Origin: Octopus bimaculoides
Lineage: Eukaryota
Length of the DNA: 41,165 nucleotides
Direction: 5' to 3'
Assembly: GCF_001194135.2 (NCBI RefSeq)
Contig: NC_068983.1
Span: 95,283,570 to 95,324,734, forward strand
The position numbers were made by a program, and so were the translations under genes. The notes beneath the pieces are model-generated. The model was not told the origin of the DNA and did no database searches. It saw only the letters and a list, made by a program, of their open reading frames with translations. The stretch's first letter is position 1; every line of letters begins with the position of its first letter. Shown here in pieces: positions 2,958 to 37,699 of the stretch.

Positions 2958-3082
2958 TGTTTCATTCTATTAAAACAATGTTTCATTCTATTAAAACAAT
3001 GTTTCATTCTATTAAAACAATGTTTCATTCTATTAAAACAATGTTTCATTCTATTAAAACAATGTTTCATTCTATTAAAACA
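2958..3082. repeat. 21-bp minisatellite, 6 copies
   Basis: Unit TGTTTCATTCTATTAAAACAA, exact except the last base of copy 6. Confidence 0.97.
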
Positions 3083-7787: not shown

Positions 7788-8012
7788 GCGACAGCTGGCA
7801 GAATCGTTAGCACGCTGGGTGAAATACTTACCGGTATTTTATCCGTCTTTACGTTCTGAGTTCAAATTCCATCGAGGTCAGCTTTGCTTTTCATCCTTTT
7901 AGGGTCGATAAATTAAGTACCAGAGAAACAATGGGGTCGATGCAATCGACTACTCATCTTCCCATAAATTTCAGCCCTTTTGCCTTTAGTAGAAGAGATT
8001 ATTATTATTATT
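7788..8012 (+). mobile_element. tRNA-derived SINE, family B
   Basis: CTGGCAGAATCGTTAGCA (A-box-like) ... GAGTTCAAATTCC (B-box-like), body homologous to 25709-25929 and 30740-30836, (TTA)n tail. Confidence 0.9.
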
Positions 8013-8834: not shown

Positions 8835-10079
8835 ATGGATAACATGCTTAACATGCCGTCAGGCAAGGATTTCCTAGAAGGTCGTCAACAAGAACAGCTG
8901 AACAAAGCAAATTTCGCCGCTGCAGCTGGTATATCGAAAGAAAGATTAATGTGAAACCAGTTGTATTAAACAAGCACAAAGAGATGTTTCAGAGGGAGGG
9001 TCACGAATTGAAAGCCACCCTCCCCAGTGAATTAATAGAAAACACTACAAAGAAAATAATTGTACATTTCAAAAGTGAGGGAAAAACTAGGCAACACACC
9101 ATTAAACCTATGAAACCAACCGAGGTAGTGCTGCTACCAACCTACCTAGGAAGGCGCACTTCCAAAATAACGGTGGGAGAAATCCCTCCTAAGATATACG
9201 TTAACTGGTTTTGTGCAGCACTTATCATGGGCTTAGAAGACAAAATATCAATCGTTGAAGACACTAAAATCGAGCAGCAGAACTGGAAAGGCCAGGGGCT
9301 CGAAATAGTTATTCAAGCAGCCCCCACACACCTCGAAGAAATTGCAGAGACTATCCAGATTAGAAAGGAGACCAAGTTACGTGTGATGGTCGAGGGGAGG
9401 AGGCCTCGCTGCTTTAAATGTAGCGAGAAAGGCTACGTAAAAGTAGAATGCCCCTCTCCTCCCCCATGCATCCCTCAGAACCACCAACCACAGCTGATGC
9501 AAAGGATCCACCCATACAGGAGAATACAACTCCAACAACCGAAAAAGAGGAAACCAAAAAATGATTGGGCTGCAACCCACAAAAGAAAGTACAAAAATGA
9601 AGAAACACCCCTCTAGCCTCAACACCAACAAGAGAAAATCTCTCCCTGCAGACACACACGATTCCCAGATAGTCCACCCAACCCTAACATTGACAGAAAA
9701 TAGCCAAATCTACCCCTCCCAGTCTCGAAAAAGAATCTCACCCCTCTTCCCAACAGCAGCCGAGTTCAATTTAATGGAATTAAATATCAAGAATAATTTC
9801 TTAGCAGATGAACTACAAGACATACCAACTGAAGAATTTTTCAAAGGACATTTCACCATCCTACCAGAGGGAATTCAAATTTATTCCATAGATAGGATAA
9901 ATTATAATATGTTGTTCTCCCGATTCCCCAACAACATAGACCCTCTCAGAAAGGACTTCTGTACGTCTATGTACGAGGGCCTAACCAAAAGAATCCCCGC
10001 AAGACGGACGATATTGAGAAGGGATTATAATCCCTTCTCCTGCAAAAGCAAGCCTTTTTTATGGATACACTCACTGTAG
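8835..10079 (+). pseudogene. LINE ORF1 (gag-like)
   Basis: MDNMLNMP.. from 8835, frameshifts near 8950 and 9615, degenerate CCHC knuckle RPRCFKCSEKGYVKVECP (H to Y), Pro-rich linker, further C-terminal segment. Confidence 0.75.
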
Positions 10080-25630: not shown

Positions 25631-25708
25631 GCCCGTCTGTCTGCCTGTATGTTTACGCAGAGAGTTATTGAGACGTATCAACATTCTTTTTCTATACCAC
25701 ATATGTAA

Positions 25709-25929
25709 TATCGGTTTTAAATTTTGGCACAAGGCCAGCAATTTCGTGGGAAGAAGTAAGTCGATTACATCGACCACAGTGCTCAAGTAGAACTTATTTT
25801 ATCGAACCCCTAAATGATGAAAGGAAAAGTCGACCTCAGAGGAATTTGAACTCAGAAAGTGAAGACGGGCGAAATGCCGCTAAGTATCGTGCCCAGCATG
25901 CTAACGATTCTGACTGTTCGCCGCCTTAC
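25709..25929 (-). mobile_element. tRNA-derived SINE, family B
   Basis: Reverse-complement homolog of 7788-8012. Confidence 0.88.
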
Positions 25930-28360: not shown

Positions 28361-29608
28361 CAAGGGTTGGACAAAATAATGGAAAAACCTTAAAATTTCA
28401 AACAAATTTACTTTAATGTGGGGTAGGGCCGCCTTTGGTAGTAATTACAGCTTGAATTCTACGAGGTATGGACTCGTAGAAAGTTTGAATTGTTTCCAAA
28501 GGAATTTTTGTCCATTCTTCAGCTAAAACAGTCTCCAGTTCTTGTAGTGATAATAGTGGAGGATAACGACTGCTTACTTGTTTTTCTAAAATGCACCATA
28601 AATGTCCAATAATATTGAGATCTAGGGACTGTGGTGACCAGATTAGAATGCTCCTCGTGCCATTCAGTAACAACTTTTGCTGTGTGAATTGGTGCATTAT
28701 CATCCTGAAATATTGCATTTCCCTCCGGAAACAGTTCCGCAACCATAGGATGAATTTGATCAGATAAAATGCTTAAATAGTCTTGACTATTAATTCTACC
28801 ATGAAGGGAAACCATTGGATCGACGGATTTCGAAGATATAGCCTCCCAGATTATCACAAAGCCTCCTCCATGTTTAACAGTTGGAAGAAGGCAATCTAGG
28901 TCAAATGCTTCTTTTGGCTGTCTCCACAGGTATACTCGGCCAGTGGTCGGAAATAAGGTAAAGGATGACTCGTCCGAGAAAATGACATTTTTCCACTGCT
29001 CTAGAGACCAATTCTATAGGTTTTTGCTCCACTTTAAACGCTTTGCAACGCTTGTTTTTGAAAATAGTGGTTTTCTGATTGCAACCCTCCCATGAAATCC
29101 GGCTTTGTGCAGCTCACGGCGAACAGTTTTTGTGGAAATTGGATGCTCGAGGTGGTCGTTAAGCTCTGCAGTAATTTTGGGAGCTGTACATTTGTGATCC
29201 NNNNNNNNNNNNNNNNNNNNNNNNNNNNNNNNNNNNNNNNNNNNNNNNNNNNNNNNNNNNNNNNNNNNNNNNNNNNNNNNNNNNCTTTCTCAAAGGATGT
29301 TATTACTTTCGAGACAGTACTTCTTGATACACTAAATATTTCAGCTGTTTTCGTTACGCTAGCCCCTGCCATACGATCACCAACAATTTGAGCTCTTTGA
29401 AAGTCCGATAGATCTGTCATTTAAATGAATTTTAATTACGTTTTTTTTATGATATCTGAAAAGAAAAGCAATTTTAGCAAAACGTATTAAACAACACTAA
29501 TAATAACTCAAAAAACATAAAAATAAACAAGCTTTTGACGGTTTTATAGATATTTCAAAATTATGATGCTATGATGCTAGGTGTTTCCATTATTTTGTCC
29601 AACCCCTG
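28361..29608 (-). mobile_element. Tc1-like DNA transposon with both TIRs and TA TSD
   Basis: TA-CAAGGGTTGGACAAAATAATGGAAA (28361) and TTTCCATTATTTTGTCCAACCCCTG-TA (29608). Confidence 0.95.
28413..29420 (-). pseudogene. Tc1 transposase (DD34E), inactive
   Basis: MTDLSDFQRAQIVG.., VIFSDES, FQDDNAPIHTA, SLDLNIIGHLW (catalytic E to G), GGPTPH*. Frameshifts; partly in an N gap. Confidence 0.92.
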
Positions 29609-30739: not shown

Positions 30740-30836
30740 AGGCGACGATCTGGCAGAATCGTTAGCACGCTGGATGGAATGCTTAGCGGTATTTCGTCCG
30801 TCGCTACGTTCTGAGTTCAAATTTCGCCGAGGTCAC
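30740..30836 (+). mobile_element. Family B SINE head, 3'-truncated
   Basis: Matches about 7788-7880. Confidence 0.85.
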
Positions 30837-30944
30837 ATGGGTGGTATTATTCGAAAGAGTAAACAATGCGTAGTACATTGTGACCAGCGGTGTATAAAAA
30901 AAAAACATCAGATAGTCTTGTCGATACCGTGATATATGCATATA

Positions 30945-30987: not shown

Positions 30988-31127
30988 CGTTTTTTTGCAT
31001 ACCCAACGGTATTTTTGTATTTCATGTTTGTTTACGTTTTGTGATGTCCTGTATCCATATATGCATAAGCTATATACATACATACATACGCATGTATGTA
31101 CATTTGTTTGTCTATATATGCATATGT
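30986..31127 (+). repeat. Partial direct duplicate of 31726-31858
   Basis: About 140 bp, highly similar: TCGTTTTTT..ACCCAA.GGTATTTT.GTATTTCATGTTTGTTTACGTTTT.TGA.GTCCTGTA.CCATATATGCAT. Confidence 0.9.
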
Positions 31128-31149: not shown

Positions 31150-31853
31150 TTATTATTATTATTATTTGATTGAACGCCACGCATCCATTTCCAAGTAAGT
31201 TTTTTCTTAATATAATCGATGCGACTCCCTCCTTTACTTTACCCCTCTCTCTCATCCTTTCTCTAATTCTTTTTTCTCCCTTTCACCGTTTTCTATCTGT
31301 CTGTCCCTCTCGCTCTCCCTCTTCCTCCTTTACTCTCGTTGCTCACACGTGACCATCATCCATCCTTCCTTTCCTCACGTGATCTTTCTTTTCCTTCACT
31401 CTGTTGCGCAGCTCGGATGCATTCGTATCTGTCTCCTCTCTTTTCTCTTATCAAAGAATCTTCTTCAAGCGTTCGCTACTTTACCTCGTCTGAGCCTAAT
31501 GGCCCTTCCTGTTTGTATTCGTTTCATTCGGTTTGTTGTATGTCCTGTTTTTGTTACCAACTTTGACCCTCTGCAAATCCCATTTTTATTTTCGGTTCGC
31601 GGGAGCAACTGCCTTCAAAGTCTTATCTTGTCGTTTGATTGATCGAAATAAGGAATAGAAGGACACGCGACAACTGATGAAGGGTCGTTTTTTATGTTAC
31701 TTGTCTTGTTTTCCATTCGTTTCTCTCGTTTTTTGCGTACCCAATGGTATTTTCGTATTTCATGTTTGTTTACGTTTTATGACGTCCTGTACCCATATAT
31801 GCATAGCTATATACATATATACTTAGGTATGTACATGTGTGTCTATATATGCA

Positions 31854-31860
<7 letters not shown>
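31150..31860 (+). mobile_element. Pyrimidine-rich repeat carrying a permuted hammerhead (copy A); possibly Penelope pLTR-derived
   Basis: Shares CTCTCGTTGCTCAC (31333-31346, exact) and GTCCTGTACCCA.ATATGCA (31784-31803, 19/20) with 37700-38238 in the same order. Confidence 0.7.
31621..31689 (+). ncRNA. Non-circularly permuted hammerhead ribozyme candidate, copy A
   Basis: CTTAT-C-TTGTCGT ... GATC-GAAA-TAAG ... GCGACAA-CTGATGA-A-GGGTC. Stem III has 5 WC pairs plus 1 GU, stem I has 6 WC plus 1 GU, stem II is short with a bulge. Confidence 0.7.
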
Positions 31861-31906
<46 letters not shown>

Positions 31907-32289
31907 TGCCCCATCGTTATCGAGAATGGTCATTGCACGAGGCTTAACTGTTAACAGTACTGTGATCGAGTGTGACATTTTAGCCCAGCTAAAGATCTAC
32001 AATGTTTTGTATAGAATTGGCATCTAAGACTAGCCGGCTGTAATTGTAATTGGGCTTCATATACCGTTGCATGTCGTTTAAGTCCTCCCGCCGAATCGCA
32101 CTCCCTTTCACATGCCTGACAGATATGATTAGTATGGTGTGTAGCACCACCACCAGCGGCATGGTAGTCAATCATCGTATATCAATATTTTTTATATATT
32201 GTACGTTTTTCAATATTTATATATCAATATCTTTTATATACTGTATATTTTTCTTTTACTTATATCTATTTTATCCAGCCTGTGGCTGT

Positions 32290-33055
32290 ATCTTGCTCGG
32301 CGACATAGAAATAATCGGTGTGAATACCCGATCACGCGGTTAGACCATTGGGAGTGAAGGACCCCTATCCTTTGTTAGGGCATCCTTCTAGGAGAAGGCA
32401 ACTCAGGCAACTGGGATAACTCCGACATAAAACCTGCGGCTCAGTGGTTACCGATGATGTTGAATTGTTCTTTTCGGGTTATGGCTACTGTTGCTTAGTG
32501 AGTGGGATTGACTCAGTGCACAGATTTTCCTCACTTTAAAAAAATCTTCTTGCACAGGCATTGCACGATAACAATATTGATTGATTAATTAATTAACTAA
32601 TTGATGATTGTTGATAGTGCTATGAGTCTCAACTGAATGGCTGACTGTAGCTTAAAAAGCAAACGATCAATGAAGTTCCAAAACAGTATAAAAATAAATG
32701 GCAGTAAGGACTCTGAAACCACATCAGATGAAAGGGTCTGGCCCGGCAGGGGCTCCAGAGCATCACAGTCTGAACCCGGCCGTCATCATGCTACTGTGAT
32801 AGAACCAAATAAAATATTGAATATTGGCTGTTGGAATGTACGGACACTGCTTGAACGCGATTCCTCAGATTCCGCTGAGACGATATTAGCTGGAGATTGT
32901 CATCTTACAGAATCTTGTGGAAAATATATATTCTTTTGGAAAGGGGGAGATGAAGAGCTTAGAAGAGAAGCTGGAGTGGCATTTGCCGTTAAGACTACTC
33001 TTGTGGAGAAGTTGAAAGAATTCCCAGTCGGGATTAACGAGCGTCTTATGTCCAT
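32290..33055 (+). mobile_element. RTE-clade LINE 5' portion with APE fragment
   Basis: LNIGCWNVRTLL..ETILAGDCHLTE..YIFFWKG..RREAGVAFAVK..PVGINERLM is an RTE-type APE N-terminus with an internal deletion; it ends at a microsatellite. The 5' boundary is approximate. Confidence 0.85.
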
Positions 33056-33112
33056 ATATATATATATATACATACATATATACATGTGTGTATGTTTTTG
33101 TATGTATGTGTG

Positions 33113-33175
<63 letters not shown>

Positions 33176-35508: not shown

Positions 35509-35670
35509 CTTCTTCTTCTTCTTCTTCTTCTTCTTCTTCTTCTTCTTCTTCTTCTTCTTCTTCTTCTTCTTCTTCTTCTTCTTCTTCTTCTTCTTCTTCT
35601 TCTTCTTCTTCTTCTTCTTCTTCTTCTTCTTCTTCTTCTTCTTCTTCTTCTTCTTCTTCTTCTTCTTCTT
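35509..35670. repeat. Pure (CTT)54
   Basis: 162 bp uninterrupted. A purine-rich low-complexity tract follows at about 35790-36240. Confidence 0.98.
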
Positions 35671-37699
35671 CCTCCTCCTTTGGTCTAATTAATTGTTTTC
35701 AATGGTTTCTTTCTATTTTCTTATTTACTAACTGACTGTGTCGCCCACTCATCTACTCTCACCACAAAACAGAGTTTCGGATGTTTTGATGGTGAGTATA
35801 TGAGATAAAATATAGAAAAGCGAAAGAGAAATAGTTATTCTTGAAGAAAATTATAGGAGAAAGTGTAGAGTGCTCTAGGTAGAAAAGAGAGACTGGGGTG
35901 TAGTCAATTAAATAGGAAGGGAAGGAAAAGAAGGTGAACATAGGGGAGAAGATGGCGGAGAAATATTAAAGGGAAAAGAGAAGTGAGAATATAATGAAAG
36001 AGAAAGCGATTTGGTTCAAATATAAATGGAGACAAAGAAAGTGATATGCGAGAAAGTAGGAAAGAAAGGAAAAACAGACAGAAAAGAAAAGAGAAAGAGA
36101 TGGAAAGAGAGAAAAAGAGGGGGTGAAGGAGAAAGAAAGATAGAAAGCGCAAGAAAGAAATGGAAAGAGAAAGAGAGTAGGAACAAGGAAAAGAATTGGT
36201 GAACACAACGTGGAAATGAGCAATAAACGAGTGCACAAGGGCGGCAGAGCGACGTAAGAGATGTTTGTGGTATTAGATGGAGCCGAAAGAGTTGTTAGTC
36301 GTATGAATTATGATGCCTGTCTTCAAACTGCTAATTATTCAGCTCAGAGTTCGTCTTCAACAGTTGCTACCATTGGACGATTCTCTTTCTCTCCTAGTAA
36401 CTGTTTTATCCACTACACTTGGTTTTGTAATATAGGGGCGTTAGTTTTCTTAGTTTAACAGTTTCGTCTCCGCTCAACATACGGACATATCTACTTATAC
36501 ACTTACATGCATATACACGCAATCACATATATTATGTATGTATGTATGTATGTATGTATGTGTGTACGTGTGTTTATGTGTGTGTGTGTATGTGTGTGTA
36601 ATAAATTTATCTTCCTCTTAAAGCAAATTGTTACTTGCAGTAGATAACTTGGATATAAATTTCTATTTTACTAGTTTTACTGGTGAAGTAATACAGTAAG
36701 AAGTGGAGTTCGAAATAATATCAGTAACCATTGTATCTATGTGTCAATATTTTTTCTGAAAGATTGTGTTAAACGCCGTAAAGTAAAATGTAAATCTATG
36801 ACAGGTTGAATAAGCAACACAGTTTCAATTCTCAATTGAAATTGTTTCATTCTCTCCTTGAAATTTAAAGCCAACATTTACGAGGTGTATATCTGTTAAC
36901 TATTTCGTTGATGAAGCAGTAGTAAGTGCAAATAGAGTTTGTAATGGTATCAGTTTTATCCGGCGTTCTACCGTATTTGCTAATCCACTGTAATAGTGTT
37001 TTATGTAGAGAAGGATAAACGATAAGAATAGATGAATACCAAACTTATCCACTACGCTAATTTTTTGGAATTCAGTGGTCTTCATATACTTTCCATTATA
37101 TTTCTATACAAATGCACGAGGGCAAAATGTTCACGACAGGTGAGGACTAAAGACACCGGAAAATAACCTTCTTTTGAGCCCTACATCAGGATATAAATTT
37201 CTATTTTACTAGAACTTCAAAATATATCCTGGGCAAGAAGTTGTTAAAAGGCCTTTCAAGGGCCTCGCTACAAGATTATCTTTTAACCAACACAAGAAAT
37301 CATATAATAATATAAATAATATATATATNNNNNNNNNNNNNNNNNNNNNNNNNNNNNNNNNNNNNNNNNNNNNNNNNNNNNNNNNNNNNNNNNNNNNNNN
37401 NNNNNNNNNNNNNNNNNNNNNNNNNNNNNNNNNNNNNNNNNNNNNNNNNNNNNNNNNNNNNNNNNNNNNNNNNNNNNNNNNNNNNNNNNNNNNNNNNNNN
37501 NNNNNNNNNNNNNNNNNNNNNNNNNNNNNNNNNNNNNNNNNNNNNNNNNNNNNNNNNNNNNNNNNNNNNNNNNNNNNNNNNNNNNNNNNNNNNNNNNNNN
37601 NNNNNNNNNNNNNNNNNNNNNNNNNNNNNNNNNNNNNNNNNNNNNNNNNNNNNNNNNNNNNNNNNNNNNNNNNNNNNNNNNNNNNNNNNNNNNATATAT

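What the first reader, a model, noticed from the sequence alone, without database searches (positions are those of the whole stretch)
31621..31689. Hammerhead ribozyme core with its three strands in a non-circular (X-Z-Y) order
Seen in sequence: all conserved hammerhead elements are present in a scrambled order. Strand X = CUUAU-C17(31627)-UUGUCGU; strand Z = GAUC-GAAA(31645-48)-UAAG; strand Y = GCGACAA-CUGAUGA(31674-80)-A-GGGUC. Stem III: A31648-U31626, U-A, A-U, A-U, G-C, G.U. Stem I: 31628-34 with 31667-73. Stem II: G31682-C31644, G.U, bulge, U-A, C-G. Established: types I, II and III are the circular orders Y-Z-X, Z-X-Y and X-Y-Z, so X-Z-Y needs a pseudoknotted fold and is missed by standard descriptors. 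The extra A after CUGAUGA is typical of Penelope-associated hammerheads. Inference: the short linker joins the distal ends of stems I and II, which lie close together in the known 3D fold, so cis folding is plausible; dimer cleavage is the alternative. As I recall, natural non-circular hammerhead permutations were reported from the Weinberg lab (NAR 2023), so the class may have precedent; whether this family is known needs checking.
Basis: partly seen in the sequence, partly recalled or inferred. Interest (0 to 1): 0.9.

Follow-up and report, generated by a model that had tools for sequence, protein, structure and literature searches.

The report
Lone scrambled-order hammerhead look-alike, probably chance
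The letters of a hammerhead ribozyme in the already published "type SGC" scrambled order really are at 31621-31689, but it is a single unconserved copy with a weak second stem in repeat-rich animal DNA, so it is most likely a chance match and not a working ribozyme.

Summary
CUUAU-C31627-UUGUCGU, GAUC-GAAA-UAAG and GCGACAA-CUGAUGA-A-GGGUC sit where stated. They can form stem I (7 bp), stem III (6 bp) and a poor stem II (2 bp, a bulge, then 3 bp, two of them G.U). The X-Z-Y order is not a new class. It is the "type SGC" hammerhead of Eckert et al., NAR 2023 (PMC10085705), validated in metatranscriptome circular RNAs and not found in genomes of known organisms. I found nothing to show that this copy is a selected ribozyme. 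Rfam gives no hit. There is no second copy in the window, and no relative in the metagenome, viral or protein collections I could reach. Stem II (+1.7 kcal/mol) and the fourth helix (+0.5) are unstable, where validated SGC ribozymes have -2.1 to -7.1 and -6.5. Nested folds compete on equal terms. In 4000 composition-preserving shuffles, 3.0% of windows gave an equally good hit in any block order, 1.4% in a non-circular order and 0.4% in SGC order. Real DNA here is about 2.6 times richer in such helix triples. If this is a gigabase-size genome, that means hundreds to thousands of chance hits. My verdict is a probable chance match (about 0.8). A genuine SGC ribozyme is about 0.07. Weak cleavage in vitro is still possible.

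The parts
31621..31634 (+). Block S: the 5' strand of stem III (31621-26), the putative cleavage-site C17 (31627, cut expected between 31627 and 31628) and the 5' strand of stem I (31628-34)
   Evidence: Sequence; descriptor hit
31635..31639 (+). Linker of 5 nt (uugau) from the far end of stem I to the far end of stem II. Published SGC ribozymes typically have 3 nt here.
31640..31653 (+). Block G: the 3' strand of stem II (31640-44), GAAA (31645-48) and the 3' strand of stem III (31648-53)
31654..31666 (+). Linker of 13 nt (aauagaaggacac). Its GAAGGA (31658-63) could form a weak fourth helix of A-U and G.U pairs only with U31688-93.
   Evidence: duplex energy +0.5 kcal/mol
31667..31687 (+). 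Block C: the 3' strand of stem I (31667-73), CUGAUGA (31674-80), the extra A31681 and the 5' strand of stem II (31682-87, with G31684 bulged)
31699..31710 (+). A second substrate-like strand (cuugu-C31705-uuguu). It could pair with the same G and C blocks in GCS order (I=5, III=5). This is not significant.
   Evidence: arises in 366 of 5000 shuffles of the flanks

Best explanation
This is a chance match to the hammerhead consensus in the type-SGC block order. It lies in T-rich, repeat- and microsatellite-rich non-coding DNA of an animal genome, and it has no selected function as a ribozyme. The pyrimidine-rich strand CUUAUCUUGUCGU happens to lie near two purine-rich stretches that flank a GAAA and a CUGAUGA. 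With G.U pairs, a bulge and an inserted base allowed, three helices can be drawn. If transcribed, the RNA would mostly adopt nested hairpins. At best it would cleave slowly in vitro.
For: (1) It is a single copy. Self-BLAST of 31400-31820 against the window finds no second copy of 31621-31689. Only the neighbouring 31729-31820 repeats, at 30991-31083, and the alignment shows that the repeat does not reach the candidate. (2) I found no relatives. There was no Rfam hit at gathering scores and no hammerhead hit even at E<=10. An exact pattern for the G and C blocks gave 0 hits in metagenome and viral contigs. A protein-space search of the ORF covering block S gave none. (3) Chance rate. 3.0% of shuffled windows hold a hit at least this good in any order, 1.4% in a non-circular order and 0.4% in SGC order. 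Real DNA here has about 2.6 times more helix triples of this geometry than shuffles do. For a gigabase-size genome that would mean hundreds to thousands of chance hits. (4) Weak parts. Stem II has a duplex energy of +1.7 kcal/mol and the fourth helix +0.5. Validated SGC-1 and SGC-3 have -7.1 and -2.1 for stem II and -6.5 for the fourth helix. In SGC-3, disrupting either helix abolished cleavage. (5) Competition. In the nested ensemble the stem I pairs have probability 0.02 and the stem II pairs 0.0. The MFE fold is unremarkable (z = -0.98). A crude energy for the hammerhead fold is -14.0, or -11.8 with the fourth helix, against a nested MFE of -14.4. By the same measure SGC-1 and SGC-3 beat their nested MFE by 3.4 and 6.5 kcal/mol. 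(6) Prior. Eckert et al. searched RefSeq for SGC patterns, expected false positives, and report no such RNA in genomes of known organisms.
Against: All core nucleotides are intact: C3-A9, G12-A14, the A15.1-U16.1 pair and C17. Stems I (7 bp) and III (6 bp) lie directly against the core and are longer than in many natural hammerheads. For this one window the hit is unusual (p about 0.004-0.03). The inserted base after A9, the short S-G linker and a possible fourth helix all mirror published SGC ribozymes. I had no access to the rest of this genome or to related species, so absence of a family was tested only within 41 kb and in collections that do not appear to hold this organism.
Confidence: 0.8

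Rival explanations
1. It is a genuine type-SGC hammerhead ribozyme encoded in an animal genome. The transcript folds into the doubly pseudoknotted core and cleaves itself in cis after C31627. It might process a transcript of a mobile element or an unannotated non-coding RNA.
For: The core and the three stems are complete and in register. The architecture parallels SGC-1 and SGC-3, including an extra base after A9 and a short stem I to stem II linker. The per-window chance of an SGC hit this good is 0.4%. The region is rich in retroelements, which is where animal hammerheads usually occur.
Against: There is no second copy and no relatives. Stem II and the fourth helix are unstable. The hammerhead fold is not favoured over nested folds, unlike in validated SGC ribozymes. 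The candidate is not part of the neighbouring repeat or of the SINE. Published SGC searches found none in genomes of known organisms.
Confidence: 0.07
2. It is a chance-born sequence that nevertheless self-cleaves or dimer-cleaves weakly in vitro, with no biological role. The single type-GCS sequence from Caballeronia is the published parallel.
For: GCS-1 was a lone descriptor hit without covariation, and it cleaved partially at the predicted site. The minimal hammerhead requirements are met here on paper.
Against: Stem II is much weaker than in GCS-1 (GACC/GGUC). Strong nested alternatives tie up GAAA, the stem II strand and block C.
Confidence: 0.12
3. It is another kind of RNA gene that uses the UGAUGA/CUGA letters, for example a C/D-box snoRNA.
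For: There is a weak SNORD49 match at 31635-31699 (15 bits, E=0.69).
Against: The score is far below the gathering score of 37. There is no CUGA D box downstream of the UGAUGA. The fold is not significant (z = -0.98).
Confidence: 0.01

Closest known systems
[quoted passage not shown]
   Same: The block order is the same (cleavage site, then GAAA, then CUGAnGA). All core nucleotides are the same. A short linker joins stem I to stem II. An extra unpaired base follows A9 (U in SGC-1 and SGC-3, A here). The position where a fourth helix would form is the same.
   Different: The known ones come from metatranscriptome circular virus-like RNAs and not from cellular genomes. They form families of 407 and 176 sequences with covariation. 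HRIMA-1 has an invariant stem I (AUGUU/AACAU), which this copy lacks. Their stem II and fourth helix are Watson-Crick and stable, whereas here they are bulged, rich in G.U and unstable. The linker is 5 nt here, not the typical 3.
The type-GCS candidate GCS-1 of Caballeronia peredens (same paper)
   Same: It is a lone genomic descriptor hit with a full core in a non-circular order, with no covariation and no obvious biological role.
   Different: GCS-1 has GC-rich stems and was shown to cleave partially in vitro. This sequence is untested and has a far weaker stem II.
Minimal type I hammerheads of Penelope-like elements and animal retrozymes (Cervera and de la Pena 2014, PMC4209133)
   Same: The setting is an animal genome rich in retroelements, and there is an unpaired base at the 5' end of stem II.
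   Different: Those are type I (order C-G-S) with a long helix II hairpin (6-8 bp) and almost no helix III. They act as dimers and occur in hundreds to thousands of copies within PLTR repeats. None of this applies here: no GAAA follows the CUGAUGA, and no other hammerhead-like site occurs in the window.

Membership tests
Hammerhead ribozyme (any type) | Conserved core: C3 U4 G5 A6 N7 G8 A9, G12 A13 A14, the A15.1-U16.1 pair, and H17 not G | tested here: met
   CUGAUGA is at 31674-80, GAAA at 31645-48, the pair is A31648-U31626, and H17 is C31627
Hammerhead ribozyme (any type) | Three helices lying directly against the core, including a stable stem II with G10.1-C11.1 | tested here: inconclusive
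   Stem I has 7 bp (-7.4 kcal/mol) and stem III 6 bp (-1.8). Stem II has G82-C44 after an inserted A, but it is 2 bp, a bulge, then 3 bp with two G.U pairs, at +1.7 kcal/mol
Hammerhead ribozyme (any type) | Site-specific self-cleavage 3' of H17, abolished by a G5 mutation | not testable with these tools
   This needs an in vitro transcription and cleavage assay
Type-SGC hammerhead (Eckert et al. 2023) | 5'-to-3' block order S, G, C | tested here: met
   Descriptor hit with order SGC; the definition is
Type-SGC hammerhead (Eckert et al. 2023) | A fourth helix tying together the other sides of stems I and II, required for cleavage in SGC-3 | tested here: inconclusive
   Only GAAGGA (31658-63) with UUUUUU (31688-93) is available. 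It has 3 A-U and 3 G.U pairs at +0.5 kcal/mol, against -6.5 in SGC-1 and SGC-3
Type-SGC hammerhead (Eckert et al. 2023) | Membership of a family with conserved core and covariation in stems I-III | tested here: not met
   I found no second copy or relative. The rest of this genome and its sister species could not be reached, so the test is incomplete.
HRIMA-1 motif | A stem I of five invariant base pairs (AUGUU/AACAU in SGC-1) | tested here: not met
   Stem I here is UUGUCGU/GCGACAA
Rfam hammerhead families (types I, II, III, HH9, HH10) | A covariance-model match | tested here: not met
   There were 0 hits at gathering scores in the window and no hammerhead hit at E<=10 in 31300-32000. This is expected for a non-circular order, so it carries little weight.
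Penelope-like-element minimal hammerhead | Type I order with a long helix II hairpin followed by GAAA, repeated in PLTRs | tested here: not met
   No stem II hairpin plus GAAA lies downstream of the 31674 core, and there are no repeated copies

The most novel reading that the evidence does not exclude
This would be the first type-SGC (non-circularly permuted) hammerhead ribozyme encoded in the DNA genome of an animal. It may have two alternative substrate strands (C31627 upstream and C31705 downstream) flanking one catalytic G-C unit, so that double cleavage would release a 78-nt RNA with ligatable ends.
Probability: 0.05. Interest if true: 0.7.

Novelty: not a real feature. Interest (0 to 1): 0.15.

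Why it matters
If it were real, it would move non-circularly permuted hammerheads from environmental circular RNAs into a cellular animal genome. That would imply standard descriptors and Rfam models miss a whole layer of genomic ribozymes. As it stands, the case shows something more ordinary. A complete hammerhead core with three drawable stems, in any of six block orders and with G.U pairs, a bulge and an insertion allowed, turns up by chance in a few per cent of 41-kb windows. A lone hit without family evidence should therefore not be scored as a discovery.

Tried and rejected
1. Rfam at gathering scores and at E<=10 gave no hammerhead. The only local hit was a sub-threshold SNORD49 match, which I rejected because there is no D box.

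2. I looked for a repeat family. Self-BLAST, repeat finding and tandem-repeat finding show the candidate is unique in the window. The adjacent 92-nt repeat (31729-31820 matching 30991-31083) and the SINE copies do not include it.

3. I looked for external relatives.
   - The G+C block pattern gave 0 hits in metagenome and viral contigs.
   - The conserved flank repeat gave 0 hits in metagenome contigs.
   - A protein search with the 97-aa ORF over block S gave none.
   - Exact look-ups of five window ORFs found nothing on record.
   - As a result, neither the organism nor its paralogues or orthologues could be reached.

4. A literature search for the SINE head sequence found nothing.

5. The alignments of the SGC families are held only as images in the supplement, so I could not build a covariance model of the known families.

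6. The second substrate-like strand at 31699-31710 is not significant. It arises in 7% of flank shuffles.

7. A Penelope-type minimal hammerhead or tandem dimer reading is rejected. No stem II hairpin plus GAAA follows the core, and no circular permutation of S-G-C repeats gives a standard type.

Full report
**What is in the sequence**

The stretch 31621-31689 reads, on the + strand, u-CUUAU-C-UUGUCGU-uugau-UGAUC-GAAA-UAAGG-aauagaaggacac-GCGACAA-CUGAUGA-A-GG(G)UCG-uu.

- Stem III is A31648-U31626, U-A, A-U, A-U, G-C, G.U (6 pairs).
- Stem I is 31628-34 with 31673-67 (6 Watson-Crick pairs plus one G.U).
- Stem II is G31682-C31644, G83.U43, G84 bulged, U85-A42, C86-G41, plus G87.U40.

A descriptor I wrote myself recovered exactly this site. 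It asks for CUGANGA, with or without one inserted base, then GAAA and UH, with stems contiguous to the core, G.U pairs allowed, one bulge allowed in stem II, and any of the six block orders within 150 nt. The hit was order S-G-C with I=7, II=5, III=6. The only other combination it found uses the same G and C blocks with a second pyrimidine-rich strand at 31699-31710. None of the other 17 CUGANGA sites in the window gives anything comparable.

**What the arrangement is called**

The order X-Z-Y is not unprecedented. Eckert, Friedrich, C.E. Weinberg and Z. Weinberg (NAR 2023, PMC10085705) divide the hammerhead into blocks S (cleavage site), G (GAAA) and C (CUGAnGA). Types I, II and III are CGS, GSC and SCG. 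The first non-circular permutation they found and validated is type SGC, which is the order seen here.

- They describe 407 HRIMA-1 sequences and 176 variants.
- All come from metatranscriptomes, associated with hairpin-ribozyme circular RNAs.
- The families show covariation in stems I-III.
- The linker between stems I and II is typically 3 nt.
- A fourth helix ties the other sides of stems I and II together, and SGC-3 needs it for cleavage.
- They expected many false positives from descriptor searches and accepted only candidates with covariation.

I rebuilt SGC-1 and SGC-3 from the oligonucleotide table. Both have an extra U between A9 and G10.1, which parallels the extra A31681 here.

**Context**

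The window is animal DNA with assembly gaps (3502 N). It is dense in microsatellites and retroelements.

- A LINE lies at about 8950-13100, with endonuclease, RT and zf-RVT domains.
- A tRNA-derived SINE head occurs three times. From memory it resembles the abundant octopus SINE. I could not verify this.
- A transposase HTH fragment lies at 29034-29420 (-).
- A C2H2 zinc-finger ORF lies at 31951-32175 (-).
- An ORF at 32637-33173 (+) looks by eye like the N-terminus of a LINE endonuclease, but it had no Pfam match.

The candidate sits in a T-rich stretch (31170-31760) between a gap and an (AT)22 array. It is not part of the SINE or of the 92-nt repeat next to it (31729-31820 matching 30991-31083, 91% identity). 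It has no second copy in the window.

**Is it more than chance?**

I ran 4000 dinucleotide-preserving shuffles in 1-kb blocks and counted the fraction of windows with a hit of at least 18 stem pairs.

| Block order allowed | Windows with a hit this good |
|---|---|
| Any of the six orders | 3.0% |
| The three non-circular orders | 1.4% |
| SGC only | 0.4% |
| Strict per-stem thresholds (I>=7, II>=5, III>=6), any order | 12 of 4000 |

Shuffles understate real DNA. If the core letters are ignored, helix triples with this geometry occur at 42 non-microsatellite loci in the real window, against 16 +/- 4 in shuffles. So the hit is unusual for one window. For a gigabase-size animal genome, which I assume and cannot verify, it would be one of hundreds to thousands expected by chance. 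The second substrate-like strand is not significant either: it arises in 7% of flank shuffles.

**Would it fold and cut?**

The table gives duplex energies in kcal/mol for each helix.

| Helix | Candidate | SGC-1 | SGC-3 |
|---|---|---|---|
| Stem I | -7.4 | -1.2 | -2.9 |
| Stem II | +1.7 | -7.1 | -2.1 |
| Stem III | -1.8 | -7.1 | -2.9 |
| Fourth helix | +0.5 | -6.5 | -6.5 |

- The candidate's fourth helix can only be GAAGGA with U6.
- The nested MFE of 31610-31700 is unremarkable: -20.1 kcal/mol, z = -0.98.
- That fold ties up G12/A13 and the stem II strand by pairing them with the stem I strand. It also folds block C on itself (GCGAC/GUCGU).
- In the nested ensemble the stem I pairs have probability 0.02, stem II 0.0 and stem III about 0.25.
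- I made a crude energy for the hammerhead fold: the nested part plus the stacking of the crossing helices, with no pseudoknot penalty. It gives -14.0 (-11.8 with the fourth helix) against a nested MFE of -14.4 for the candidate.
- By the same measure SGC-1 gives -27.8 against -24.4, and SGC-3 gives -19.9 against -13.4.

So the validated ribozymes favour the active fold, and this sequence does not. The connectivity itself is sterically acceptable, because it is the connectivity of the published type-SGC ribozymes. This is an inference.

**Search for relatives**

Nothing was found.

- Rfam gave no hammerhead.
- The exact G+C block pattern gave no hit in metagenome or viral contigs.
- The flank repeat gave no hit in metagenome contigs.
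- A protein-space search of the ORF over block S gave none.
- Exact look-ups of five window ORFs found nothing on record.

The collections at hand do not seem to hold this organism. The absence of a family is therefore shown only within 41 kb.

**Verdict**

This copy lacks every kind of evidence that separates a ribozyme from a descriptor hit: a family, covariation, a stable stem II and fourth helix, and a favoured active fold. The published RefSeq-wide search for this very order found none in genomes of known organisms, which makes the prior low. My estimates are:

| Reading | Probability |
|---|---|
| Chance match without function | about 0.8 |
| Chance sequence that would still show weak cleavage in vitro, as the lone GCS-1 did | about 0.12 |
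| Genuinely selected type-SGC ribozyme | about 0.07 |
| Another kind of RNA gene (C/D-box snoRNA) | about 0.01 |

The decisive tests are a whole-genome and sister-species homology search with a covariation analysis, and a cleavage assay with G5 and compensatory stem mutants.

Noticed in passing
window 7797-8000 (+), 25700-25914 (-), 30740-30850 (+): There are three copies of a tRNA-derived SINE head (GGCAGAATCGTTAGCACGC...GTTCTGAGTTCAAATT). Two continue into a shared body, and the third is cut off after about 100 nt. From memory it resembles the abundant octopus SINE, which would make the window cephalopod DNA. This is unverified.
   Followed up: partly
window 30991-31083 and 31729-31820 (+): A 92-nt dispersed repeat (91% identity) is followed in both copies by AT/AC-rich microsatellite-like sequence and preceded in one copy by (TG)n. 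Its family is unknown, and it had no exact match in metagenome contigs.
   Followed up: partly
window 8950-13100 (+): A degenerate LINE is split over several frames. It has an ORF1-like CCHC protein, an Exo_endo_phos endonuclease, RVT_1 and zf-RVT.
   Followed up: partly
window 31951-32175 (-) and 32637-33173 (+): Just downstream of the candidate there is a C2H2 zinc-finger ORF fragment, and then an ORF that looks by eye like the N-terminus of a LINE endonuclease (no Pfam match) and runs into a (TG)n array. These may be further retroelement remnants.
   Followed up: partly
window 29034-29420 (-): An HTH_23/HTH_28 DNA-binding fragment, by eye like the N-terminus of a Tc1/mariner-type transposase, is interrupted by an assembly gap.
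   Followed up: no
window 31699-31710 (+): A second substrate-like strand (CUUGU-C-UUGUU) can pair with the same GAAA and CUGAUGA blocks in GCS order. This gives an S-G-C-S layout. It occurs in 7% of flank shuffles, so it is probably a by-product of the T/G-rich context.
   Followed up: yes
window 2958-3082, 15694-15902, 35509-35671: Three perfect or near-perfect tandem arrays are present: a 21-nt unit x6 (100% identical), a 14-nt CT-rich unit x15, and (CTT)54.
   Followed up: no
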